From NCBI GenBank assembly GCA_000388065.2, contig KB932207.1: a stretch of 13,992 nucleotides of DNA, one strand, 5' to 3'. Source of the DNA: Fonticula alba ATCC 38817. Its lineage: Eukaryota > Protista > Nucleariida. Positions within the stretch are counted from its first letter, which is position 1. Each line of letters opens with the position of its first letter. Under the pieces are notes generated by a model. It saw nothing but the letters and a program-made list of their open reading frames with translations. It did not search any database and was not told the origin of the DNA. Both the position numbers and the translations under genes were made by a program. This document shows positions 1 to 12,653 of the stretch, in pieces.

Positions 1-179
1 CCCCCCCCCTCGGCCAGGAGGGCAGCCCCCCGGGGCCGTGCGGGCTCCTGCGTGGGTCCCGGGCCACCACACGTCTCGCGAACGCGTGAGTGTGCTGGTC
101 CTTGCACGCCAGCGCAAATATGGACGCACGTGCCGGGCCTTTTTTTTTTTTGCTCTGCCCGGGGGCGCCCCGAACACAC

Positions 180-220
180 ATGAGGATCTAGGCGACCGTG
201 GTTGTGGGGGACGTCGGCTC
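180..220 (-). CDS. Putative 41-nt exon of the large gene (G-ADVPHNHGRLDPH); the gene may continue beyond the window start
   Basis: Acceptor TACAG| at 222-221 is the first AG after CACTGAC (342-336). The phase-1 reading is His-rich like the rest of the protein. A possible donor is CAT|GTGTGT at 179. An alternative phase-0 reading is EPTSPTTTVA* (stop at 190-188). Confidence 0.45.
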
Positions 221-335
221 CTGTATGTGTGCGTAGGCACATGCATCCAAGAGCCCGCCCCGGCCGGTGCGCGGTGTATAAATTTTAAATGACAACATAT
301 GTATGTGTGTGAGTGTGTGTGATGCCACAAGCGGA

Positions 336-342
336 GTCAGTG
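336..342 (-). promoter_or_regulatory. Predicted branch point CACTGAC (A at 337) for the acceptor at 221
   Basis: It lies about 12 nt inside the upstream edge of a 126-nt AG-free zone. Confidence 0.55.
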
Positions 343-886
343 GAAATGCTCCAGGGAGGAGATGTGCAGGCAGGCGCACAAGTGCCCACACGCGTGCACA
401 CGCTCTCTGGTACCCTCCCCCCCCCCGGAATGGCGGTGCGCCTCCGGGCTCCATACACTGACGCGCACCTTCTTCCGAGTGTCCCCGCATCGCCCGTGTG
501 TGTCCTTGTGTGATGTCCGGCGCGGTGGTGGGCGGGCACGCTTGCTGCACCCCCCTCTCCGCAGGAGGAGGAGGAGCAACAGCAGTAAGGCATTGCGTGT
601 GCATACACGCACAGGAAACACACGCACAAGACTGATGAATGGCAAAATGGCGGCCTGCACAGGTGCACGGCATCAAAGGTGGGGACACAGATGGGAGCCA
701 CCCACTCATGCAGGTGCACAGTTTCATGCGCGCGCGCACATGTGTGGCAGTGGCTCCCCTTCTCGCGCGCCTCTCCCTTCTCCTCCGGCTCCCGTGCAGT
801 TCTCTCTCTCAAAAACAAAGCCGCTCCTCTTCCTCTCGCAGGAGAGAGAGAGAAGGAGGAGAGTGTTTGTCTCTTCCCGCCATTAC

Positions 887-906
887 CGCGACACGCCCAC
901 GCTTCC
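887..906 (-). CDS. Putative 20-nt micro-exon of the large gene (M-EAWACR-G)
   Basis: Acceptor TTCAG| at 908-907 is the first AG after ACCTGAC (1132-1126), across a 238-nt AG-free zone. Donor is CGC G|GTAATG (GT at 886-885). The phase 2 to phase 1 exon links both neighbours in frame. An alternative phase-0 reading GSVGVSR* cannot be excluded. Confidence 0.5.
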
Positions 907-991
907 CTGAAGGCGCATTTGCGCCCGCGGACCGCGCGCAAGGTGGATTGTCGCGACCGCCGTCCCCGCACGTACGCGCCCCGCGCGCGCG

Positions 992-998
<7 letters not shown>

Positions 999-1028
<30 letters not shown>
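999..1028. repeat. (GT)15 microsatellite
   Basis: Read directly from the sequence. Confidence 0.95.
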
Positions 1029-1029
<1 letters not shown>

Positions 1030-1125
1030 CGAGGTGCCCGTGTGTTTGTCACGTCCATGGCGATTGCGTGAGCACGGGAAAGGGCGAGCGAAAGGTGCAC
1101 CATGGTTGGTGTGTTGCCGGATGTG

Positions 1126-1132
1126 GTCAGGT
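1126..1132 (-). promoter_or_regulatory. Predicted distant branch point ACCTGAC (A at 1127) for the acceptor at 907
   Basis: It lies about 20 nt inside the upstream edge of a 238-nt AG-free zone. Confidence 0.6.
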
Positions 1133-1506
1133 TTCCGCCGAGCGGCCTCCTAGAGTGCGGGAGAGAGAAGCATCCCCCCTCCCCTTCCCCCGCGAGGCAG
1201 CCGCGCATGCGAATGTCTGGAGGTGTGGCTTCTCCTCTCTCCCTGCTGCCCTGTCGGCGCGTGATAGACCAGCCTGCGAGAGGGTGTCGCTTGGCCATGC
1301 GGCGCACCTTCTTTCTCTCTCTCACTCACACACACTCTCTCTCTCTGTCTGGGTGTGTGGCCAGAGGCATTCAGTGCACTGGGGCACACGCATGCAGAGC
1401 CAGGCTCCTGCCCCCTTTTCCCCTCGCCCTGGGGTCTGCCCCCTGGATTCCCCTCCGGGGGGGGGGGGGGGGCGCGGAGGACACGCGACTGCGCACTCGA
1501 CCTCAC

Positions 1507-1848
1507 ATGCGACGCTCATCGGGCCGCAGGGGGATGGTGTTCTCGCGCGCGCGCACGGTCTCGCTGAAGCGCAGGTCATCGTAGGAGTAGTCGTCGGGCT
1601 TCATCCAGCCACCGGAGTCGCTGCCCTGCCGGCGGTCCGCCTTGGCCCCGAACTGGCGCTCGGTGTGGGTCCACTCATCCGCCAGCCGGCGGTAGGTGTC
1701 CTCCTGCCACTCGCCGGGGGTGCTGGGAGGGTGGAGGCGGCGGTAGGGCATCTCCTCGGCCGAGGTGTCGGCACCCGAGCGGCCATGGCGCTCCGGCATG
1801 CGGAACCCCTCGCGCTGGTGGTGCTGCCGGCTGTCAAGGTGATGGTCG
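1507..1848 (-). CDS. Next exon (342 nt, phase 2 to phase 2) of the large gene: ..SSH-I-DHHLDSRQHHQREGFRMPERHGRSGADT..PLRPDERR
   Basis: Acceptor ACAG| at 1850-1849 follows an AG-free intron with CACTGAC at 2159-2153. AT+C joins in frame as Ile. Composition (His/Asp/Arg-rich) and codon bias match the main exon. It ends at CGC AT|GTGAGG (GT at 1506-1505), or alternatively at the in-frame TGA at 1505-1503. Confidence 0.8.
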
Positions 1849-1894
1849 CTGTGTCACATCCGGCAAGGGGCGATGTGGTGTTTTGTGTGTGGGC

Positions 1895-1916
1895 GTGTGT
1901 GTGTGTGTGTGTGTGT
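1895..1916. repeat. (GT)11 microsatellite
   Basis: Read directly from the sequence. Confidence 0.95.
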
Positions 1917-2152
1917 GGGCGTGTGTGGATGCGCGCGCGAGCGCGTTTCCGGGAACACACGCCCGATCGCGGAGGCAGGGGGCGCCGCGGCGCGAGCGAA
2001 GCGCAGCGGTAACAGGCGGAAGGTGAGGAGAGGTGGATCGATGGCAGGAGGACGGGGAAGAGGGGGGAGGGAGAGGGCGGAGGGGCACGAAGAGTGGGTG
2101 TCGGGTGCGTAGGCGCGCAGAAGAAGAAGAAGTAGAAGAGGCAGGGACCGCG

Positions 2153-2159
2153 GTCAGTG
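2153..2159 (-). promoter_or_regulatory. Predicted distant branch point CACTGAC (A at 2154) for the acceptor at 1849
   Basis: It lies in an intron with no AG in its sequenced part. The first AG downstream (305 nt) gives an in-frame exon. Confidence 0.65.
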
Positions 2160-2230
2160 TGTGCGCACAACGAAGGGCCATGGCGGCAGGGGGAGAAGGG
2201 CGGGCAGCGGGCGCAGAGGCGGGAGGGGGG

Positions 2231-2265
2231 NNNNNNNNNNNNNNNNNNNNNNNNNNNNNNNNNNN
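2231..2265. other. Assembly gap (35 N) inside an intron
   Basis: The N run is flanked on both sides by GCAGAGGCGGG(G)AGGG, suggesting an unresolved short tandem repeat. Confidence 0.95.
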
Positions 2266-2315
2266 GCGGGCAGAGGCGGGGAGGGAGGATCATCGATCAG
2301 CCGCCGGATCATCAC

Positions 2316-3133
2316 ATGTGGCTGGACGCCGTCGGCCGGGGCGGCGGCTGCTGCTGCTGCTGGTACTGCGGATCGCCGGTGTACTGCGCGGACAGGTCGG
2401 CCCGGCCCTGCTGGAACTCGGCCATGGAGTCGGAATCCTGGCGCGGGGACAGGCCGCTGACACTGGCCCGAAGGGCCGAGTCGGCGGAGTGCGTCAGCTT
2501 CTCGGCACGGCGGTGCGCCCGGCCGTCATACTCGGACGCCCGGGCCAGCTCGGTGGCCGTGCTGCTGTGCGGGGTCACCGTGAACCGGGCATTGCGGCTG
2601 TCCGCATGCCGGGCCACGCGGTCGCTGTCGAAGTCCCCGGCCACCGCCTTGGCGGCCTGGCGCTCGGCCGAGCTCAACGGCCGGAAGTAGTTGTTCAGCA
2701 GGTTGCGCTTTTGCCCGGTGTCGGACTGGTCGCCGGGCAGCGGCGCCGCTGCCCCATGCGGCGTGGCCAAGTTCTTGCGCGGCGACGAGGGGGACGACGA
2801 CCGGCGGCCGGCGGCGGCGGCGGTGCCGCGCCGACCCCGCGCCATCGCCCGGCCGCCCAGCGGCGCCGACCACAACTGCCCGCCGGGCGCCCGGTCGGCG
2901 AAGACCTCCGGGCCGGGGGAACTCCCGCCGGCGTTGGGGCCCACCCCGGCCGGCGGGTACAGCCGGCTCACGTCCTCCTGATTGACGACGCCATCCTTGC
3001 CGATGCTCAGGGTGCTGATGGTGTTCCAGTCCTGGGCGCTGCCAAACTCCCCGGGCGAGGAGAGCGGGCTGCCCATGAAGGAGGACGACACCCAGGGCGT
3101 GATGATTCCCTCCCCCGTATAGCGCTCACTGTA

Positions 3134-3165
<32 letters not shown>

Positions 3166-6100
3166 GGTCGCGGCGGCGGCTGCTGCTGCTCATGTCCTCG
3201 TGCTGGCCGCCGGCCATGGATGTCCGGCTGGAGGAGGGGGACGCCGCCCGGGTGGACCCGGTCGAGGAGGAGTGCAGCTCCGGCCGGCGGTAGTGCTGGT
3301 GCGTTTGGCCGCCGGCGGCCGCCGGCGAGGTGGACCGGCCGGAGGCCTGGTACCCGGGGGCCGCGGCGTCGGCCATCTCCGTCTCGTAGTGGTGGGCCGC
3401 GGAGTGGCGGTCGGTGGAGCTGGCGGCGTCCACCGCGTGGCCGGCCATGGGCCGGGCATTGGAGGCCCACGGCCAGAAGCCGGTCAGCATGCCGCCGGCC
3501 TTGCGCTGGCCCTCGGACATGAAGCGCCCCTCCTGGGCCTCGGCGCCGGTGGAGGACTTGGACCGGATGTGGTGGTCCACCGACATCGGGTGGGCGCCGA
3601 AGATGCTGGCCCCGCCGTCGGCCGCCGGGTTGGGCGGGCTGCTGCTGGCGCGGCCGGCGCCCAGGCTGAAGGCCGCGCGCTGCTGCGCGTCGGCATGGTG
3701 CGACTCCGGCCTCGGGGCCGAGGAGTAGCCGGACGACTCGCTGCGGGCCTTGCCATCATCGGCTTGGCGCTGCTGGCGGTCGGTGGCCGCCGCCGAGGAG
3801 GCGTCGTCGGCCTTCTTCCGCCCCGCCAGGGCCTCGGCGCTGGCCTTCTCCGCCTCGCGGGCCTTGCGCTCGCTCTCCAGCTTGTCGGTTTCCGCGCGGT
3901 TCTCCACCCACTCGCGGTTGATGCGCTTCGGGTCGCTGCCGGCGGTCAGGCTGCTGGCCATGTCGACCACGGCCTGGGCAATGCGCGGCAGGTGGTCCAC
4001 CGCGCGGGTGCGCTGCGCCCAAATGGGCGTGGCATTGGCCAGGTGCTCATTCGGCACGGCCTTCGGGTTGGCGGCGATGTGGTTCTGGCCGGCCTCCATC
4101 CGGCGGTTGACCTCGGCCATGCTCCAGGACCCGGTGTCGGTCGGGTCCTGGGACTGCGGCCGCACGCCGCCGTGGATCAGCTCGTCCAGCGGCCCCAGCG
4201 GCAGGCGCTTGGGCCGGGCGTACTTGGCGCACTCCGGCGAGGCGGTCCGCTTGGCGGACGTCCGGTCCATGGCGCTGAGCCCGGGCTTGCCGATGACCGC
4301 CGGGTCGATGAGCTTCTTCCGGGCGGCCAGGTCCTCGGGGTCCATGTCGCCCTCCAGGGTGTCATACCGGTTGTAATGGTGGTCCCCCTCGCGGCGCTCA
4401 TGGTGGTGGTCATGGTGGTGGTGCTGGCGCGAGAAGGCCCCGCCGGGGGGCCCCCCATCGCGGTCGGTCTTGGCCCCGTCGACCAGCTGGTGGCGGGCCT
4501 CGTCGAAGGCCTCGCGGCCGGCCTGCACCGCCTTGCCCACCACGGTGCCCATCTTGTCGGCCACCTCGCCGGCCACCTGGCCGATGTCCTTCCGGCCGGA
4601 GGACAAGTCGCGCTGGATGCTGTGCACCTCGTGCTTGAGCACGGCGCGCGCCACGTCCGCCTTGTCGGCCAGCGACTGGGCCGTGTCGGAGAGGGCCCGG
4701 CGGGCCCCGTCGGCCAGCGACTCGGCCGAGTCCTTGACCGCCTCGGCGGCCGGCCGCACCGCATTGGCCGCCTGGTGGGCGGCATCCGCCGCCGGGGTGG
4801 CCTGCCCGGTGAAGGCCTCCTTGAGGGAGGTCAGCACGCTGGCCATGACGCCGGGCTTGTCCGCGCCGTGGCTGGCCGCCGCCGTGGCGTCGCGCCCATC
4901 AGCAGCGGCATCATGGCGGTACCGGTGGTCGGCCATGCCGCGGTCGCGCCGCTGCTGGTGCAGCAGGTGCCGGTCGCCGCCGGCGGCATCCGGCGACGCG
5001 TGGAAGCCCCCATCCTCATCCATGCGGCGGTGCTCATCCAAGTACTTCCGGCGGTTGCCCTCGGTCATCTTCATCATCTGCCAGTCGTCGGCATCGCGGT
5101 CGTCATCGTGCAGCTGCCGCCGGTGGTAGTGCTGCTGCTCGTCCTCGAAGTGGCGAAAGGCCTCCCGGCGACGGTGGTGATCGAAGCCGGAGTCCCCCTC
5201 AAAGTCGCCGACCTGCTCGTCGGCGAAGCGGCGATTAGCGCCGGCCATGGGGCCGGCGCCCCGGCGAAAACCCGACTCGCCGGACAGGGACGTCGAGTAC
5301 TCGGAGTCGTGGTCGGCGTGGTGCGGCGCGAAGGAAGTCCGGCGGCCGTCCAGCTGGCTGAACCCGGCCCGCTGGTGGTGCCGGCGATCGGCGTCCATCA
5401 TCCGACGGTCATTGGTGAATTCGCTGTCGGCATCCTCGTAGGTGTAACGCGGCCCGGCCCGGCGCTGGGCCATGGCATGCTCGCGGTGGCCGCCCTCCTC
5501 CCCGCGCACCGGGTGCCGGTCGAAGTACTCCTGGGCCTCGTCGCCCATGCGCTCGGCCCAGCGCCGGGCGGCCCCGGCCGCGCGCTCCGACATCTCGGCC
5601 GCCCCGTCGACCAGGCGCTCGGCCCCGTGCTCCACGCGCTCGGCCAGACGCCGGGCCGAGGGGTACTCACTGTCGGCCAGGTCGCCCAGGTACCGCGACG
5701 CCGACCGGGCCATGCCGCGGCCCATGCGCTCGCCCTCCTCCAGGGCATGGTCCAGCTGCTGGCGCAGGCGCTGGCCATCGAAGGAGTCCAGCATGCTGCC
5801 GCCGGGGCCGGTGTCGTCCTCGTGGTGGCGGTAGTAGTGGTGGGAGGAGTGGCGGCGGCGCGAGGCCCGGCCGTCGGGGCCCTCGAAGTGGCGATCGTCC
5901 TCATGGTGCCGGGCGAAGTCCCGGTCGTCGTCATCATCATCATGCTGGCGGTGGCCGTAGTGGCTGTCGCGCTGGCGCTCGCGGCCGCCCTCCTCCTCGC
6001 GCATCATCATGCGCCGCTTGTCAGCATCATCATGCGGCATGGCCGTCGAGGACAGGGCGCTGGTCAGGCCCTCGGCCATCTGGCCGGCCGCGCGGCCGGC

Positions 6101-7453
6101 CTCATTCAAGGCCCCCGACAGGTCCCCATGGCGGATGTGGTCGAAGGCACGCGAGGCCCCGCGAGTCAGGGCGTCGCTGGCCCGGCGGGCGCCATCGGTC
6201 TGGGCCAGGCGCTCGCCGGCGTCCGCCAGCCGGTCGGCCACCTCGTCGCCGGCCTGGCGAATGGACCGGCGGCCGCGCTTCAGCGCATTGATGGCGTGCA
6301 TGGCCCCGCCGGCCAGGTCCCCGGAGGACACCGCCTCCAGGGTCTTCTGGCCCTCGCGCATGGCGCTGGTGGCATCCCGGCGCATGAGCTCCCCACGGGG
6401 GGACTTGGCCAGCTCGCCGAGGGCACGACCGCCCTCCTGCATCAGCTGGTCCACCATGCCGCCGGCGCTGGCGCTGGCCCCACCGCGGCCGGACAGCCGG
6501 GCCCCGGCACGCCACGACCGCTCGAAGTCCTCCACCTGCTGGCCGAAGCTGCGATCGCGCGGCGACGAGGCATACCCTCCCCGGGGCTCGTCGTCCTCGT
6601 AGTAGGACCCGCTGCCGGCGGCCCGGCGCCGATGGTCGGCCGACTGGCGCCAGCTGTCGCCACCATGGTGGTGGCGGCCGCCGTGGCGCATGCCACCGCC
6701 CCCGCTGCCGGCATGCTCGCCGTCATCATGGTCGAAGTGCTGGCGGCGGGAGAACCGCCCGGCCAGGCGCTCGCCGGCCCGCGGCGTCGGCGGCCCATAG
6801 TAGTGCCCATCGTGGCGCTCGGCCTCGAAGTCGGTGGGCGCGTCGTGGCGCGGGTCCTCCACCTCGATGTACTCGCCGGCGTCGCGCGGCCGGCCCCCCT
6901 CGTGGGTGCCGTAGAAGTTCCGCGGGGTCCCGTAGTCCGGGGCCCGGAAGTCCCCGGCGCCGGTGCTGCCCTTGCCGGTGTCCACCATGCGCCGGTGGCC
7001 GCCGAACATCGGGCTGCCGGAGGCCGGCGAGGCGGACGGCCGCGGGGTGGCCGGCATGCTGCTGGTCCCGCGCAGGGCCCCGCGCGCGCTCTCCGCCGCG
7101 CGCTCATTGTCCCGGCGCATCAGGTCGTAGTGGCTCCAGACCTGCTGCTCGTGCATGGTGTTGCGGCGCTGCTCCTCCTCCAGACGCCGGGTTTGGTAGA
7201 GCCGGCTCCGGTCGGTGCCGCCGGCCATGTCATCGTCGTGGCCGGTCGTCGGCCGGCTGGCCATGGTCGACAGCGGCCGGACGATGTCCACCGAGGCCGC
7301 GCCGTGGCGCATGCCGCGGCCGCTGCCGCTGCCGCCCTGGTGGTGGTGGTGGTGGTGGCTGCCGTGGTGCTGCTCGCCGTGGCTCCCGCGGTACGTCATG
7401 CCCCCGGACACAAGCGACCGGGTGGTGGAGGTGGAGTAGAAGCGCGAGCCATT
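2316..7453 (-). CDS. Main 5138-nt exon of a very large, mostly disordered His/Asp/Arg/Gly-rich hydrophilin-like protein with LEA-like amphipathic helical blocks; no family recognised
   Basis: The frame is open from acceptor CAG|AAT (AG at 7455-7454; reads NGSRFYSTSTTRSLVSGGMTYRG) to the phase-2 donor CAC AT|GTGATG (GT at 2315-2314). Codons end strongly in G/C. The first in-frame ATG is at 7399; the ORF-track 'start' at 7411 is a GTG. An in-frame TAA just upstream of the acceptor bounds the exon. Confidence 0.9.
3135..3164. repeat. (CTG)10 coding trinucleotide repeat, read as poly-Ser (AGC) in the large protein
   Basis: Read directly; the protein reads DRSSSSSSSSSRY. Confidence 0.95.
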
Positions 7454-7708
7454 CTGCCGTCCGGAGCGTTACCCCAGCCAGCAGCCGAAGTGTGGCGGTT
7501 TCGGCCCGCCCCCCCCCCCGCCACCCCGCGCACCCGGACCCCGAGAGCGTCACAGGAGGCGTTCGCCGGGGGTGGCGGCGCATGTGCGCGCGTGGCCGAT
7601 ATCCCGATCCGCCCCGAGGCGCAGCAAGCGGGGCCCGCCGCAACAGGGGCACAACACGCGATCGCGGCGCGCAAACACACACGAACACGGACAACGCACG
7701 GGGACATG

Positions 7709-7739
<31 letters not shown>

Positions 7740-7745
7740 ACACAC
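7709..7745. repeat. (CA)n microsatellite with one TA interruption
   Basis: Read directly from the sequence. Confidence 0.95.
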
Positions 7746-8063
7746 GAGCAAACGGACACACGAACCCCGTCGCAGATGGCGCAGCAGGGCAAAAGAGAAA
7801 GAAGCGCGGCGAAAGAGGAGGGCGGGCACGACGGTGTCGTGGCCGGGCGCGCAGCGCGCGTGCCGGATGGTGCGACACACGAAAACAGGCGCGCGCACGT
7901 CCGCATGGCGGGGGAGGGGGTGCGGCGTGCGCGGACATGTATGGGCGTATTCGTTTGTAGGAGAAAGCACCACACCCGATGGCGATATGGGCCGGGAGGC
8001 AAAGGGCGGTATAATGCGGCGGCGGGGGGCGTGGTTCGAGGGATGGTTTTGCAAGAGTCGCCA

Positions 8064-8070
8064 GTCAGTG
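8064..8070 (-). promoter_or_regulatory. Predicted distant branch point CACTGAC (A at 8065) for the acceptor at 7454
   Basis: It lies near the upstream edge of a 642-nt AG-free zone (8097-7456). The first AG downstream opens the large exon. Confidence 0.65.
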
Positions 8071-8741
8071 GATGGGTTTGGGGTTGGGTTTTTTTTTCTT
8101 GTCTGTCTGCTTGCTTGCGCGTGTGCTTGCTTCGCCTGGGATATGTGCGCGCGCCCGCGCGCAGGAGCCAAGAAGGAAGTACGAGAAAGAGAGGAAGGGC
8201 GCAGGGCCAAGGAATAGAAAGCAGGCAGGGCGGCCATCAAACGGCCAGGCCCCTTTCTTCCGGGGGCGAGCCGAGCACCAAGCACGCGCGCTATCCCGCA
8301 TCATGGGGACCAGGCACACATGCGCCGGGGGGACACCAGGCAGACGGTCCCCACCCGTGGAAAGCAACCCGCCCTGGCTCGCGACGGGCGCCGGCGTCGC
8401 CCGCCCCCCCGCCCCCCCGCCCCCCCTTCCCCCCGCGAACAGCGGCGCACGCCTCGCACGCGAACGTCGATCGGAGGAGGAGCCCTGTGTCGTCGAGCAG
8501 GTGCGCAGGCGGCACACGCCCGAATGTGCATGGGACGGTGCGCGACCATGCGCGGGGGGGGGGGGGGGGGGCCGGAGAAGCGTGGCAGCAACCTGTGCAT
8601 GGTGCGCGCGCATCGCAATCTGCACGGGTCGAGAGGGCGTCTGACACAGACCGGTGGCCAGTGTAAGCAAGCCTACTTGCGCGCCTGGGCAAATATCACA
8701 CACAGGTATTCACACACACACATGTTCATGGAGATGCTAAC

Positions 8742-8888
8742 TGGCTGAACTGTGCGAGCGCATTTTTCGGCGCCCCAGGAGGCAGCGCGCAGGCCGAAGG
8801 GCCTGGGCTGACATCGTCCTGCACACCGGAGGAGCGGCTGGGCCTCCGCGACTCTCTCGAGCTCGGGGTTTGGGGCAAATGCCCCTGA
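8742..8888 (-). CDS. Candidate upstream exon of the large gene (SGAFAPNPELERV..CARTVQP)
   Basis: A pyrimidine tract precedes CACAG| (AG at 8890-8889). The 147 nt are open and end at the phase-0 donor CCA|GTTAGC, matching the phase-0 acceptor at 7453. Codon bias is mixed, so it could be a UTR exon. Confidence 0.25.
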
Positions 8889-9031
8889 CTGTGTGGGGAA
8901 AAAAAACAAAGGAAGGAGCATGCATATGCACACTTCGTGCGCACCGTGGGCCTGCGCACAAACGCATGTCCCTGCGCACGCTCGCGCACGGACACATGCG
9001 CATCTTTGCCCACAATCTCATGTACACTCAC

Positions 9032-9154
9032 CCACAATCGCGCACACCGACTGGCCCCCCCCCCGAGCCTGCGCGCGGGAGGGGAGAATCTGCTGCCTGC
9101 CGCCGTACGCCGCCCAATAAGCAAGCGAATGGCCAAAAAACGGCCATACAACAT
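9032..9154 (-). CDS. Candidate first exon of the large gene (MLYGRFLAIRLLIGRRTAAGSRFSPPARRLGGGASRCARLW)
   Basis: ATG at 9154 begins 41 Arg-rich, acid-free codons ending at the canonical phase-0 donor TGG|GTGAGT (GT at 9031-9030). The start context is weak and the codons are AT-rich. Confidence 0.22.
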
Positions 9155-9252
9155 ATGCACATGGGCACGTGCCACACTGGCGGCGAGCCCTGCCGAGCGG
9201 CGAACCTTCAAGTGGAAGCCCGTGAGCAACACCTCGTCTCGCTCACACACAC

Positions 9253-9254
<2 letters not shown>

Positions 9255-9289
<35 letters not shown>

Positions 9290-9304
9290 GACGCAGACGC
9301 AGAC
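9255..9304. repeat. (AC)16 followed by (GCAGAC)3
   Basis: Read directly from the sequence. Confidence 0.9.
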
Positions 9305-9937
9305 GCACATATACACCCAGGCATGCTTCCCGCCCTCGAACTATGTGCAGGGTCCTCGCGGAACAAGTCACATGCGCACACACACCAGGGGCGCGCGAGG
9401 ACAGCACAGACACCCCCGGGGCCGCCCCTGCTCGTCTTTTCCCCTCGTGCCCCCGGCGCACACATAAGTCGCTCGGCCGGATCGCAGGAGGAGGAAGCTC
9501 ATGCCACGACCAAAGCCTCTCTCTCTCCCCCCCCCCTCCAGGGCGCGGCGGAACATCGTGCCCTGAGAAGGTGTGTCTCCCTCTCTTCCCCTCACAAAAA
9601 AGAGGGCTGCTCCTGCAGCACCTGGAAAGAAAGGGGGGCTCTAGACGTGTCTTTGGAAAACCTCGTGGCGGGAGGGCGCCCGGGAAAGCCTCCTATCCGG
9701 CATGCCCACCCCCTTCACAAGCGAAAGTGCGCCCCATCCCGTGCCAAGGCCCCTGCCCGGGTTGATGAAGTTCAAAGAGGGAGGAAGGCATGTAGAGAGA
9801 GAGAGAGAGGCAGCGGGGGGAAAGGATGGCGTGACGGAGGAACCCGCACAGAGGAAGGCGACCGACCAGGGGGGCGAGAGAGGGGGAAAACAAAAGCAGA
9901 ATGATCTTCACACACGAAGAGATGTGTTTATCGAGAT

Positions 9938-10020
9938 ACACACACACACGGACACACACACACACACACACCCACACGCATACATGTGCATAGGCGTGCG
10001 CGTGCGCGTGCGTGCACGCG
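9938..10020. repeat. Interrupted (CA)n plus (GCGCGT/GCGT)-type alternating purine-pyrimidine tract
   Basis: Read directly from the sequence. Confidence 0.8.
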
Positions 10021-11113
10021 TACTCCTGGCCAGCTCCACAAAGAAGGTGCACGAGTGTGCACCACCCATGGGGGAGCGCGGGGGGGGGGGGCGCTCGTCG
10101 CAGGGTGGGGCACACACAGAAGGCAATGGAACAACACGGCGAGGCAGTTGCGCCCGGCGCCTGCTGGACCACTTCACCTCTGGGGGGGGGGGCGTGGCGC
10201 CGGAGTGGCGCGGCGATTTGTTTCGTGTGGGGAAGAGAGGCACGGGAGGCGGGGGGGAAGAAGGGCCGCCAGATCGGACGCCTTCAGCCCCCCCCCCCTC
10301 CCCCCCCTCGTGGGCGCGCGGCCATGCACACATGCTTTCTGTGGCCGATCCTGGCCGCCGCGCCCGAAGCCGGGCGCGGCGCGCGAAGAGAGCCGGCACA
10401 CCGATGCATGCACGCACACGGCCGCGCGCCCTGACACACGAAGTCCCTGCTCGTCAGCCCTCAGCAACAAGACTGGGGATGCCGATGGGACGCCATGCCG
10501 AGGGGAGGGAGGAAGGGCGGCGAGGACGCAGCGCCGCCGCCGCCGCCGCCGCCGAAGCCGACACACCCTAGCCGCTTACTTCTGAAGCGGGATTGCCAAA
10601 GTGCCAGGCAGCGGCAGAGCGGGGAGTCGCAAGCAGTGACAGGCCAAGAGGCGCACGGGGCACACACGCGAGAGGCCGGGCGAGAGCGCAAACAACCGGG
10701 CAGGCGGCCGGGCGGGCGGGCGATCGCACACGCCACGGGTGTAGTAGAACACCGCCCAGGAAGGGTGGGGACGGAGAGGAGGGGAAGAAAGAGAGCAAGC
10801 GCGGCAGGGGGGGCCCGGATGAAAACAAAGGCGCATGAGTCCACCGTGGGAGGAGGGGCCGCGAGATTTGACGCAGACGAACGAGTGGCAGGGAGGAGGG
10901 TGGGGACATGCCGGACACGCGTGCGTGGAGGGGACACACACACACGCACGCGCGCGCGAGCGCGGAAAGGGGACAAGAAGAAAAGGGCCGGCGAAAAAAA
11001 AAAACAACAACAAGGCGACAGGAAGGGCGGGAGAAGGGGGAAGGAGCGAGGAGCGAAGAAGGCATGTGACACACATTCGTCCGAGAACGGGTTGGGCAGA
11101 GAAGAGTAAGTAA

Positions 11114-11134
11114 TTAACGGAAGATGTCCGCGTT
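11114..11134 (-). CDS. Exon 3 (terminal) of the small protein: NADIFR*
   Basis: CCCTGAC (11158-11152) is followed by a pyrimidine tract and CCAG|, then AAC GCG GAC ATC TTC CGT TAA in phase 0. A pyrimidine-rich 3' region follows. Confidence 0.7.
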   Translation of the reverse strand, partial: NADIFR

Positions 11135-11379
11135 CTGGATTGGAAAGGGTCGTCAGGGGCTTCGGTCTTTCGCTCTCAAACACAGCTTGGACATGCACAC
11201 TCGCGCGCACACAGACACAGACACAGACACAGACAAGATACCCGGGGGGCGGCGATGGCTGGCCGGGACGCGGACGGCGAGGACACGCGGGCCTGCCCGC
11301 TGGCACACCCAAACACACGGAAACTAAACACACGCCCTTGCATCGCGTGCGCGCGTGCACATACACACACACACACACA

Positions 11380-11433
11380 CATGCACATGCACATGCACAT
11401 GCACATGCACATGCACATGCACATGCACATGCA
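11380..11433. repeat. (CATGCA)9 hexamer array, which is (UGCAUG)9 on the transcript strand, preceded by (AC)n
   Basis: Nine perfect tandem copies lie inside intron 2 of the small gene. Confidence 0.95.
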
Positions 11434-11744
11434 TACACAGACACACACGCACGCGCGCATACACAGACAGAGGCCCGGGGACACGGGAAGAAGGCCGCAC
11501 ACTATGGCAGAGCAGGCGCTGGCGGGTGCCCCCCCCTGTGGCAGGGGCCCCCACCCATCGAGCTGCTCCGTTTCATGGCGGCCGCCTCACGTCCCCCTGG
11601 GTCCCGGGATCCCATGTGCGGCGCGGGTGTGGCTCTCCTCAAGCACTGACCACCAATCAAACAGGAGAGAAGGCCGAGGGGTGACACCCCGATTGCTTGG
11701 CTCAGACACGCTCGCATGCGCACAGACACATGGGGACACATGGG

Positions 11745-11786
11745 CACACACACACACACACACACAGACAGACAGACAGACAGACA
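11745..11786. repeat. (CA)11 followed by (GACA)5
   Basis: Read directly from the sequence. Confidence 0.9.
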
Positions 11787-11974
11787 GGCCCGCGCGCGCG
11801 CCCGCTCGACCTCTTGGTTCCCGGCGAGTTGCGCGAGAGAGGAAGCAGGCAAGAACGCGGCGGCAGCCATCCCCACACGGACCAAAGAGGCCGGCCGGCG
11901 GGGAGGGTATCGGGAAGGCGGAGCGTGGGGGAGGGGGACAGGAGGACACAAGCGTCGCCCTATGCTGTGCGCAC

Positions 11975-12154
11975 CTTCTGGAAGGGGGTCTCGTAGAGGT
12001 TCTTGCTCTGCGGGCCGCGGGTGGGGCCGGTCTGAGAGCTGCCCATGGGCTTGTTGGGCATGTGGCCGGTGCCCGGGGTCTTGGAGTGGGGCAGAGAGCC
12101 GCTGTCGGAGGGCTTCTTGGGCATGCTGCCCTTGTTGGCGGCACCAGGGGCGGG
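11975..12154 (-). CDS. Exon 2 of the small protein (PAPGAANKGSMPKKP..SKNLYETPFQK)
   Basis: GCAG| at 12156-12155 is the first AG after GACTGAC (12227-12221). The exon is 180 nt, phase 0 to phase 0, with strong codon bias and donor AAG|GTGCGC. Confidence 0.85.
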
Positions 12155-12405
12155 CTGCGGGAGGCCGATGCCGGGTGTGATGGCAAATGCCATGCCGGAA
12201 GAAGGCAGGGAAAGGGCGCCGTCAGTCCATGTCCTGTGTGGGAGGGCATTCGGCAAAAGAAAAACGCGCCGGGGCGGCAAAAAAAAAAAAGGAACCAAGA
12301 AAAGGACACCCAGGCACAGCCGCCCTTCGGCGGAGGCGGGCGCCCCCAGGCGGCCGGTCCCCCCGCTCCCGCGCGATGCAAGCACACCAAAAGGGAAGGC
12401 CGTAC

Positions 12406-12507
12406 CTTGGAGAAGCTGCCGGTGCTGGAGGTGGAGATGTTGCGGGCCGGGGCGCGGGCGGCGGTGCGAGCCGCGTTGACGGCCTGACGGGAGAAGGCGT
12501 TCATCAT
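12406..12507 (-). CDS. Exon 1 of a small ~100-aa protein; mitochondrial-presequence-like MMNAFSRQAVNAARTAARAPARNISTSSTGSFSK
   Basis: Start context is CAAG-ATG, about 140 nt downstream of a TATA box. The 34 codons are mostly C/G-ending and end at AAG|GTACGG. The peptide is Arg/Ala/Ser-rich with no acidic residues and an R-x-I-S-T-S motif. Confidence 0.85.
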
Positions 12508-12645
12508 CTTGACGGAGAGAGGGTCCAGGAGAGAGTGGGCAAAAATGCGACAAAATCCAGGGGGGAGAGTGAAATAGAAAAACGAAGGAGTATCTTTCTA
12601 TCTCGATGTCCTGGGAGTCTGCTGATCCCGGCCCCGGTGTGTCCC

Positions 12646-12653
12646 TTTATATA
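12646..12653 (-). promoter_or_regulatory. TATA box (TATATAAA-GGG) of the small gene
   Basis: It is a perfect TATAWAWR match in very GC-rich surroundings, 139 nt upstream of the ATG at 12507, on the correct strand. Confidence 0.7.

What the first reader, a model, noticed from the sequence alone, without database searches (positions are those of the whole stretch)
7454..8097. 642-nt AG-exclusion zone with a branch point ~610 nt from the 3' splice site
Seen: on the minus (transcript) strand there is no AG from 8097 to 7456, i.e. no CT on the plus strand. By hand count about 75 plus-strand T's lie here and none follows a C, although C is roughly 30% of bases, so about 20 would be expected. CACTGAC (A at 8065) sits about 30 nt inside the upstream edge. 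The first AG downstream is exactly the one that opens the 5.1-kb frame. Known: branch points usually lie within a few tens of nt of the AG. Distant branch points with AG-exclusion zones are described for a minority of metazoan exons (e.g. alpha-tropomyosin exon 3, PTB exon 11) and are explained by scanning to the first AG. Inference: this intron uses an extreme distant branch point.
Basis: partly seen in the sequence, partly recalled or inferred. Interest (0 to 1): 0.82.

Follow-up and report, generated by a model that had tools for sequence, protein, structure and literature searches.

The report
Long AG-free intron tail in Fonticula
In the slime mould Fonticula alba, a 642-base stretch with no AG lies between a consensus branch-point motif and the acceptor of a giant exon, one of six such stretches in a row, which suggests but does not prove that the 3' splice site is the first AG after a branch point up to about 600 bases away.

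Summary
The window is Fonticula alba, around gene H696_04378 on the minus strand. That strand has no AG from 8097 to 7456 (642 nt; 22.7 expected from composition; P about 1e-10). Flanking non-coding and coding sequence has AG at the expected rate.

The stretch is not unique. Five more AG-free runs lie on the same strand, spanning 67 to 571 nt from motif to first AG. Each starts at or just after a CTGAC and ends at a CAG. The antisense strand has no run longer than 159 nt.

RNA contigs confirm two of these as intron tails:
- Intron 1 has its branch motif 67 nt from the acceptor.
- A 1396-nt intron (11974-10579) has its last 551 nt AG-free.

The same contigs join exon 2 to 10578, not to 7453. 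No RNA covers 7000-7566. So the junction at 7454, its donor and the branch nucleotide are all untested.

Best reading, at 0.62: a distant-branch-point, AG-exclusion-zone intron. The branch would be at A8065 and the acceptor would be the first AG, 611 nt downstream. This is a known kind of intron in metazoans, and I found no description of it for Fonticula. Other first-stage notes from this scan report the same pattern elsewhere in this genome; I did not check them.

The parts
7456..8097 (-). AG-free zone of 642 nt, the finding itself
   Evidence: 0 AG against 22.7 expected.
8064..8070 (-). CACTGAC, candidate branch site with the branch A at 8065
   Evidence: it lies 33 nt after the last upstream AG and 611 nt before the next AG. 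The same CCACTGAC or CTGAC opens the other AG-free runs.
7454..7455 (-). First AG after the zone (CAG|AAT), the annotated 3' splice site of the giant exon
   Evidence: the annotated protein P0001 continues ...PFQK|NGSRF from 7453. There is no RNA support.
2316..7453 (-). Giant exon (about 1713 codons) of H696_04378, an orphan, His/Asp/Arg-rich, low-complexity protein
   Evidence: GC3 is 0.936. No Pfam family matched.
8098..8137 (-). Cluster of nine AGs directly upstream of the zone, giving a sharp boundary
   Evidence: AG observed 111 against 104.7 expected over 10578-8099.
10579..11974 (-). RNA-verified 1396-nt GT..AG intron whose last 551 nt (11134-10584) have no AG
   Evidence: X1 loose end; X2 record 11; X3 record 14; the loose end is exactly 10549-10578, abutting 11975.
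11152..11156 (-). CTGAC (A at 11153) at the head of the 551-nt zone, with one AG 18 nt downstream that is bypassed
   Evidence: An AG 12-18 nt after a branch point can be bypassed (PMC5378181).
10294..10578 (-). Exon seen in RNA contigs. It begins with an in-frame TAA, giving a 94-aa product. Its 3' end is not defined because the contigs break at a G run.
12155..12405 (-). Intron 1, RNA-verified in three runs. CTGAC has its A at 12222, and there is no AG over the 67 nt to the acceptor.
   Evidence: joint 12154/12406..
11975..12154 (-). Exon 2, ending AAG|GTGCGC
12406..12507 (-). Exon 1 coding part (MMNAFSRQ..., presequence-like)
1849..2315 (-). Annotated intron 3. It has no AG from the donor to 1850/1849 but contains a 35-N gap. 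CTGAC has its A at 2154, and the first AG is 305 nt on. The annotated acceptor is the next AG, at 1832/1831, 18 nt further and also in frame.
907..1131 (-). CTGAC (A at 1127) followed by 220 nt without AG, ending in CAG at 908/907. It lies downstream of the annotated stop.
   Evidence: 12.8 AG expected.
221..341 (-). CCACTGAC (A at 337) followed by 116 nt without AG, ending in CAG at 222/221
   Evidence: 6.0 AG expected.

Best explanation
The 642-nt AG-free stretch is the branch-point-to-acceptor segment of a spliceosomal intron of Fonticula alba gene H696_04378. U2 snRNP would bind the consensus CCACTGAC (branch A at 8065). After the first catalytic step the spliceosome would take the first AG downstream (CAG|AAT, 7455/7454), 611 nt away. 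Any AG arising in between would become a premature acceptor and is removed by selection. Shown here: the AG exclusion, its sharp start at CTGAC, its recurrence in six consecutive stretches on the transcribed strand, and RNA proof that two of the six are intron tails ending at the zone's end. Inferred: that 7454 is used, that A8065 is the branch nucleotide, and that a linear first-AG search operates. The donor is unresolved. The annotation uses 11974, which makes a 4.5-kb intron. The giant exon is then probably an alternative to the RNA-supported short terminal exon at 10578.
For: 1. AG counts on the minus strand. Inside the six motif-to-acceptor segments about 56 AG are expected in total (18.8, 9.5, 7.6, 12.8, 6.0, 1.6). 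Apart from the terminal acceptor AGs, including the CAGAAG tandem, only one is seen. Outside the segments AG is as expected: 30 against 30.2, 111 against 104.7, and 285 against 294.

2. CTGAC and the distance to the next AG. There are seven non-coding CTGAC on the sense strand. Five open AG-free runs of 67, 611, 305, 220 and 116 nt. A sixth is followed by one AG at 18 nt and then 551 nt without AG. The other 30 CTGAC in the 31-kb locus reach the next AG within 65 nt at most. CTGAC occurs about once per 1.2 kb, so finding it within 7-33 nt of the run starts by chance is very unlikely.

3. The first AG after every run is a CAG.

4. RNA contigs of three runs of the same organism. They confirm junction 12406/12154. 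They also confirm junction 11975/10578, at the end of the 551-nt AG-free zone.

5. No polypyrimidine tract precedes the acceptor at 7454. The last 50 nt are 50% pyrimidine and G-rich.

6. The 54 nt from 7453 to the first in-frame ATG (7399) have GC3 of 16/18, like coding sequence (0.936). Only 7% of 54-nt windows in the zone reach this. This weakly suggests that coding starts at the acceptor.

7. The zones share no sequence apart from (GT)n and (CA)n, so the AG exclusion arose independently in each.
Against: No RNA contig covers 7000-7566, so the junction at 7454 is unverified. The RNA runs also hold under 5% of the sampled words of exon 4500-7453.

The annotated donor (11974) is seen joined only to 10578.

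The match between the annotated acceptor and the first AG is forced. It is the only AG between the upstream stop and the first ATG.

Near-consensus branch motifs exist close to the acceptor: GTAAC with A at 7469, 15 nt upstream, and GTGAC about 96 nt upstream. Neighbouring genes use looser branch motifs (CTAAC, TTGAT, CTCAC) at 32-60 nt, so CTGAC is not obligatory.

In two zones the used or annotated acceptor is not strictly the first AG. At 10579 it is the second AG of CAGAAG. At 1831 the annotated acceptor is 18 nt after the first AG.

No lariat data are available.
Confidence: 0.62

Rival explanations
1. 7454 is a real acceptor, but the productive branch point is proximal (GTAAC with A at 7469, or GTGAC near 7550) or is spread over several sites. 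The AG-free tract persists because the strong upstream CTGAC is also engaged sometimes, so any AG downstream of it would give mis-spliced products.
For: Near-consensus motifs lie close to the acceptor. Ordinary introns in neighbouring genes have branch motifs 32-60 nt from the AG and tolerate non-CTGAC motifs. Human distal branch points often coexist with a proximal one (PMC5378181).
Against: Both proximal motifs start with G instead of the pyrimidine seen in every inferred branch site here. There is no pyrimidine tract between them and the AG. This rival still needs the distal CTGAC to be used in order to explain 611 nt of exclusion, so it differs in degree rather than in kind.
Confidence: 0.18
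2. 7454 is not a splice site. The giant ORF is an independent gene that starts at ATG 7399 with an unspliced leader, and the annotated 4.5-kb intron is a gene-model artefact. The AG-free tract then has some other cause, for example avoiding capture by the upstream donor at 11974 in read-through transcripts.
For: RNA contigs join exon 2 to 10578, with an immediate in-frame stop. No RNA covers the 7454 region. The protein is an orphan, so no homologue supports the N-terminal exons.
Against: The same CTGAC, AG-free run and CAG layout is RNA-verified as intron tails twice in this gene. The GC3 of 7453-7400 is coding-like. Exons 1 and 2 and the giant exon are all phase 0, and exons 1-2 and the giant exon share GC3 of 0.936. 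Even this rival invokes selection against AG as a potential acceptor.
Confidence: 0.12
3. The run is a by-product of base composition, of microsatellites, or of a repeated element that happens to lack AG.
For: The zone contains (GT)18 and G and C runs. Gooding et al. describe one human AG-free zone caused by a repeat.
Against: 22.7 AG are expected from composition and none of 5000 shuffles reached 0. Repeats cover under 10% of the zone. The zones share no sequence beyond dinucleotide repeats. GA, AA, AC and AT occur at normal rates in the zone. The effect is strand-specific, and its borders coincide with CTGAC and CAG.
Confidence: 0.03

Closest known systems
Distant-branch-point introns with AG-dinucleotide exclusion zones in vertebrates (alpha-tropomyosin exon 3, alpha-actinin, PTB exon 11; Gooding et al. 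2006, PMC1431707)
   Same: There is a long AG-free stretch upstream of an acceptor, with a consensus branch sequence at its 5' end. AG frequency is normal further upstream. An AG very close to the branch is bypassed, and closely spaced terminal AGs compete. The arrangement is linked to an alternative exon choice: here exon 2 has two candidate downstream acceptors, both behind long zones.
   Different: The organism is a holomycotan amoeba, not a metazoan. Six consecutive stretches in one 12-kb locus show the pattern, rather than about 0.6% of introns. The branch motif is a tight CTGAC rather than the degenerate yUnAy. No clear U-rich tract adjoins the branch (62% pyrimidine, 12% U). At 611 nt, and 528-574 nt in the RNA-supported neighbour, the distances exceed the roughly 400 nt mapped experimentally and match the largest predicted cases (Fugu PTB, -566).
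Yeast long branch-to-acceptor introns (COF1, UBC13; Gahura et al. 2011, PMC3239191)
   Same: Both have a strict branch consensus, a fungal-lineage relative, and an acceptor far from the branch.
   Different: Yeast reaches at most about 155 nt. It relies on a stem-loop that shortens the distance and hides silent AGs. Here there are no AGs to hide, and predicted folding is no better than in shuffled sequence (z = 0.61).
Ordinary fungal and Fonticula introns in neighbouring genes
   Same: They share the GTGCGY-type donors, CTRAC-like branch motifs and first-AG acceptors. In the 444-aa gene, introns predicted by this rule reproduce the annotated length exactly.
   Different: Their branch-to-AG distance is 32-60 nt, about ten times shorter.

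Membership tests
Distant-branch-point / AG-exclusion-zone intron (Gooding et al. 2006) | AG-free zone of 100 nt or more directly upstream of the acceptor | tested here: met
   642 nt with 0 AG against 22.7 expected.
Distant-branch-point / AG-exclusion-zone intron (Gooding et al. 2006) | The AG that ends the zone is a used 3' splice site | tested here: inconclusive
   It is annotated as the acceptor, but no RNA contig covers it. The equivalent AGs of two sister zones are RNA-verified.
Distant-branch-point / AG-exclusion-zone intron (Gooding et al. 2006) | [quoted passage not shown] | tested here: met
   CACTGAC has its A at 8065, 33 nt inside the edge. The same motif heads the other zones.
Distant-branch-point / AG-exclusion-zone intron (Gooding et al. 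2006) | Polypyrimidine tract adjacent to the distant branch sequence | tested here: inconclusive
   The first 50 nt after the branch are 62% pyrimidine but only 12% U. The longest pyrimidine runs (12-14 nt) lie about 240-260 nt downstream of the branch.
Distant-branch-point / AG-exclusion-zone intron (Gooding et al. 2006) | Normal AG frequency upstream of the zone | tested here: met
   111 observed against 104.7 expected over 10578-8099, with nine AGs in the 40 nt just upstream.
Distant-branch-point / AG-exclusion-zone intron (Gooding et al. 2006) | Branch nucleotide mapped by lariat analysis | not testable with these tools
   Only assembled contigs of three small RNA runs were available, with no lariat reads.
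Yeast-type structure-assisted long branch-to-acceptor intron | Unusually stable stem between branch and acceptor that shortens the distance and masks AGs | tested here: not met
   MFE z-score is 0.61. The graph distance between branch and AG is not shorter than in shuffles in any of four zones. There are no AGs to mask.
Trypanosomatid SL trans-splice acceptor region (my first guess from composition) | Kinetoplastid genome with polycistronic genes and no cis-introns | tested here: not met
   The organism is Fonticula alba. Cis-spliced GT..AG junctions are seen in RNA contigs.

The most novel reading that the evidence does not exclude
Fonticula alba as a whole defines 3' splice sites by a 'strict CTRAC branch plus first AG' rule. 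Under this rule there is no polypyrimidine or U2AF-type definition of the acceptor, and the search can run over more than 600 nt of AG-free spacer, often microsatellite-bearing. The length of the spacer would tune the choice between alternative terminal exons, here a 94-aa product against a 1915-aa product. That would make this organism a natural system in which the long-debated scanning step of 3' splice-site choice works constitutively over extreme distances.
Probability: 0.3. Interest if true: 0.75.

Novelty: new member of a known kind. Interest (0 to 1): 0.55.

Why it matters
How the spliceosome finds the acceptor AG after branch formation is still debated: linear scanning, diffusion, or structure. 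The known long-distance cases are rare, regulated metazoan exons, mapped only up to about 400 nt.

A small, culturable relative of fungi could offer clean natural substrates for testing the first-AG rule. It would have a tight branch motif and several introns per locus with 200-600 nt AG-free spacers. Such an organism could also show what limits the search distance and whether U2AF-like acceptor recognition is dispensable.

There is a practical side for annotation too. A CTRAC-plus-first-AG rule would improve gene models in this genome. In this locus the RNA contigs contradict the annotated 4.5-kb intron as the main isoform.

Tried and rejected
- **Trypanosomatid trans-splicing.** This was my first guess from GC content and pyrimidine tracts. 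I rejected it once the protein search named Fonticula alba and RNA contigs showed cis-splicing.
- **RNA structure bridging branch and acceptor.** The fold z-score is 0.61 and branch-to-AG graph distances are no shorter than in shuffles. A C-run (about 8030-8012) pairs with a G-run (about 7530-7505) in the MFE and centroid structures, but this is not significant and does not recur in the other zones.
- **Shared repeat element.** The zones share only (GT)n and (CA)n.
- **Structured RNA hosted in the intron.** There is no Rfam match in the window.
- **Pfam.** There is no match for the giant ORF.
- **Comparative test of zone conservation.** No relatives turned up in JGI metagenomes by protein or by an exact 26-mer. 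The protein search found only the protein itself.
- **Spliced mRNA contig via the 94-aa product.** It is not on record.
- **RNA evidence at 7454.** The three RNA runs of the organism have no contig there.
- **More Fonticula loci for a genome-wide count.** This was not possible. Look-ups need the exact whole product, and multi-exon proteins have no reference. The flanks of L001 are largely N runs.
- **Literature.** No paper in the library links Fonticula with branch points.

Full report
**Identity of the window.** The 5.1-kb minus-strand frame is 100% identical to a single database protein. That protein is hypothetical protein H696_04378 of Fonticula alba, 1915 aa, and it has no other relative among 5.8 billion sequences. 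The locus is KB932207.1 781547-812551 of GCA_000388065.2. My first impression from composition was a trypanosomatid trans-splicing region, and it was wrong. Fonticula is a cellular slime mould related to fungi and has ordinary cis-spliced introns.

**Annotated gene model.** I mapped the annotated protein onto the window:

| Element | Coordinates (minus strand) |
|---|---|
| Exon 1 | 12507-12406 |
| Intron 1 | 12405-12155 |
| Exon 2 | 12154-11975 |
| Intron 2 (4.5 kb) | 11974-7454 |
| Giant exon 3 | 7453-2316 |
| Intron 3 | 2315-1831 |
| Exon 4 | 1830-1503 |

**The observation.** It is correct in every detail.
- The minus strand has no AG from 8097 to 7456.
- With 75 A and 195 G in 642 nt, 22.7 AG are expected. 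None of 5000 shuffles had fewer than 9, and P(0) is about 1e-10.
- A is followed 33 times by C, 22 by A, 20 by T and never by G. GA, AA, AC and AT are all near expectation.
- Tandem repeats make up under 10% of the stretch.
- CACTGAC has its A at 8065, 33 nt after the last upstream AG and 611 nt before the next AG.
- That next AG (7455/7454) is the annotated acceptor.

**The stretch is one of a series.** The same strand carries further AG-free runs:
- 11134-10584 (551 nt)
- 2321-1851 (471 nt, including a 35-N assembly gap)
- 1146-909 (238 nt)
- 348-223 (126 nt)
- 12233-12156 (78 nt)

The opposite strand has nothing longer than 159 nt. Normalised by frequency, the CT-free (minus-strand AG-free) run is the most extreme of all 16 dinucleotides.

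Seven CTGAC motifs lie in non-coding minus-strand sequence.
- Five open an AG-free run directly, with 67, 611, 305, 220 and 116 nt to the next AG.
- A sixth (A at 11153) is followed by one AG at 18 nt and then by the 551-nt run.
- The remaining 30 CTGAC in the 31-kb locus are in coding or antisense sequence. They reach the next AG within 65 nt at most.

The first AG after every run is a CAG. AG frequency on the minus strand is as follows:

| Segment | AG observed | AG expected |
|---|---|---|
| 11974-11154, outside the zones | 30 | 30.2 |
| 10578-8099, outside the zones | 111 | 104.7 |
| Giant exon | 285 | 294 |
| Six motif-to-acceptor segments together | 1, apart from the terminal acceptor AGs | about 56 |

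The zones are not copies of one another. They share only (GT)n and (CA)n. The AG boundary is therefore sharp, strand-specific, recurrent and tied to a branch-site motif. That is the pattern expected if selection removes every AG between a branch point and its acceptor.

**RNA evidence.** Only three small RNA runs of the organism could be laid, as assembled contigs.
- They confirm intron 1 (joint 12154/12406 in all three runs). Its CTGAC lies 67 nt from the acceptor.
- They join exon 2 to 10578, not to 7453. The X1 loose end at 11975 is exactly window 10549-10578. X2 record 11 and X3 record 14 continue to 10294.
- This defines a 1396-nt GT..AG intron (11974-10579) whose last 551 nt are the second-largest AG-free zone.
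- The acceptor used is the second AG of CAGAAG, 3 nt after the first. Closely spaced AGs are known to compete (PMC1431707).
- The bypassed AG 18 nt after CTGAC is at the edge of the 12-18 nt window in which bound U2 snRNP blocks AG use (PMC5378181).
- If that CTGAC is not the branch, the next candidates (TTAAT, CTTAC at about 11114-11107) still lie more than 520 nt from the acceptor.
- The new exon begins with an in-frame TAA, so this mRNA encodes a 94-aa product.

No contig covers 7000-7566. The RNA runs also hold under 5% of the sampled words of exon 4500-7453. So the junction at 7454 is neither confirmed nor refuted, and its donor is unknown.

**Further points bearing on 7454.**
- The 50 nt before the AG are G-rich and only 50% pyrimidine, so there is no polypyrimidine tract to define the acceptor locally.
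- The 54 nt between 7453 and the first in-frame ATG (7399) have 16 of 18 codons ending in G or C. This resembles exons 1-2 and exon 3, which both have GC3 of 0.936. Only 7% of 54-nt windows in the zone reach that value. This weakly suggests that coding starts at the acceptor.
- The agreement between the annotation and the first AG carries no weight. It is the only AG between the upstream stop (7471-7469) and the ATG.
- Weaker branch-like motifs exist near the acceptor (GTAAC with A at 7469; GTGAC near 7550).
- Neighbouring genes show that ordinary Fonticula introns have branch motifs (CTGAC, CTAAC, TTGAT, CTCAC) 32-60 nt from the AG.
- For the 444-aa gene in L001, I predicted two introns from GTGCGT donors, CTRAC and the first AG. 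They reproduce the annotated length exactly with an open frame.
- Long spacers are thus a feature of this locus and, per unverified notes, of others. They are not a feature of every intron.

**Mechanism.** The best-supported reading is the classical distant-branch-point, AG-exclusion arrangement. U2 binds CCACTGAC, the lariat forms at A8065, and the first AG downstream becomes the acceptor. The yeast solution for long distances is a stem that shortens the path and hides AGs (PMC3239191). It does not apply here, because folding energy and branch-to-AG graph distance are no better than in shuffled sequence and there are no AGs to hide.

Both candidate partners of the exon 2 donor sit behind very long AG-free spacers. 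In vertebrates, distal branch points go with skipped or alternative exons. I therefore infer that the short terminal exon (10578) and the giant exon (7453) are alternative choices. This was not shown.

**Comparison and novelty.** AG-exclusion zones and distant branch points are well described in vertebrates. They have been mapped up to about 400 nt and predicted up to 566 nt in Fugu PTB, with a 1126-nt zone in human PTPRS. So the kind is known, and the length is at the top of the range rather than beyond it.

What is new is the setting:
- The organism is a holomycotan protist.
- The branch motif is a tight CTGAC.
- Six such stretches lie in a row.
- The neighbouring RNA-verified intron has a spacer of more than 520 nt.

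I found no paper connecting Fonticula with branch points. Thirty first-stage notes of this scan mention branch points in this genome. Several describe the same pattern on other pieces. I could not check them and they are not independent evidence.

Noticed in passing
window 10294-12598, minus strand: RNA contigs splice exon 2 (ending at 11975) to 10578, where the first codon is an in-frame TAA. The expressed mRNA in these runs therefore encodes a 94-aa protein with a mitochondrial-presequence-like N-terminus. The annotated 1915-aa model H696_04378 is either an alternative isoform or a fusion of two units.
   Followed up: partly
window 10579-10583, minus strand: The acceptor is a CAGAAG tandem. 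The X1 contig uses the second AG. The X2 and X3 contigs have 61 letters where 58 are expected before 10520. That could reflect use of the first AG (one extra Lys codon) or one extra GGC repeat unit. The letters were not shown.
   Followed up: no
window 1831-1850, minus strand: Intron 3 has two in-frame acceptors 18 nt apart: the first AG at 1850/1849 and the annotated one at 1832/1831. Under the first-AG rule the protein would carry six extra residues. Intron 3 also contains a 35-N assembly gap (2231-2265).
   Followed up: no
window 221-1506, minus strand: Two more intron-like units lie downstream of the annotated stop codon (1505-1503). Their candidate donors are CAT|GTGAGG at 1506, or AAG|GTGCGC at about 1307 and again at about 470. 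Each is followed by CTGAC and an AG-free run ending in CAG. The sequence between them has low GC3, so these are probably 3'UTR or non-coding exons. No gene is annotated there.
   Followed up: partly
window about 8012-8030 and 7505-7530, minus strand: A C-rich run just after the candidate branch site pairs with a G-rich run just before the acceptor, in both the MFE and the centroid fold. This would loop out about 480 nt. It is not significant against shuffles and is not seen in the other zones.
   Followed up: partly
window, AG-free zones compared with their flanks: The microsatellites inside the zones are only the AG-free types: (GT)n in zones 1 and 2, and (CA)n in zones 3 to 5. (GA)n-type repeats occur just outside the zones, for example at about 1310-1350.
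   Followed up: no
window 12640-12652, minus strand: GGTATATAAAGGG lies about 45 nt upstream of the 5' ends of the RNA contigs (12598). It is a likely TATA promoter for the gene. No comparable TATA was seen between 10290 and 8100.
   Followed up: no
L001 6416-8615, 22498-26252 and 28569-29633: The flanks of the locus in the public assembly contain N runs of 413, 1050, 3741 and 1020 letters. These limit any wider count of AG-free runs.
   Followed up: no
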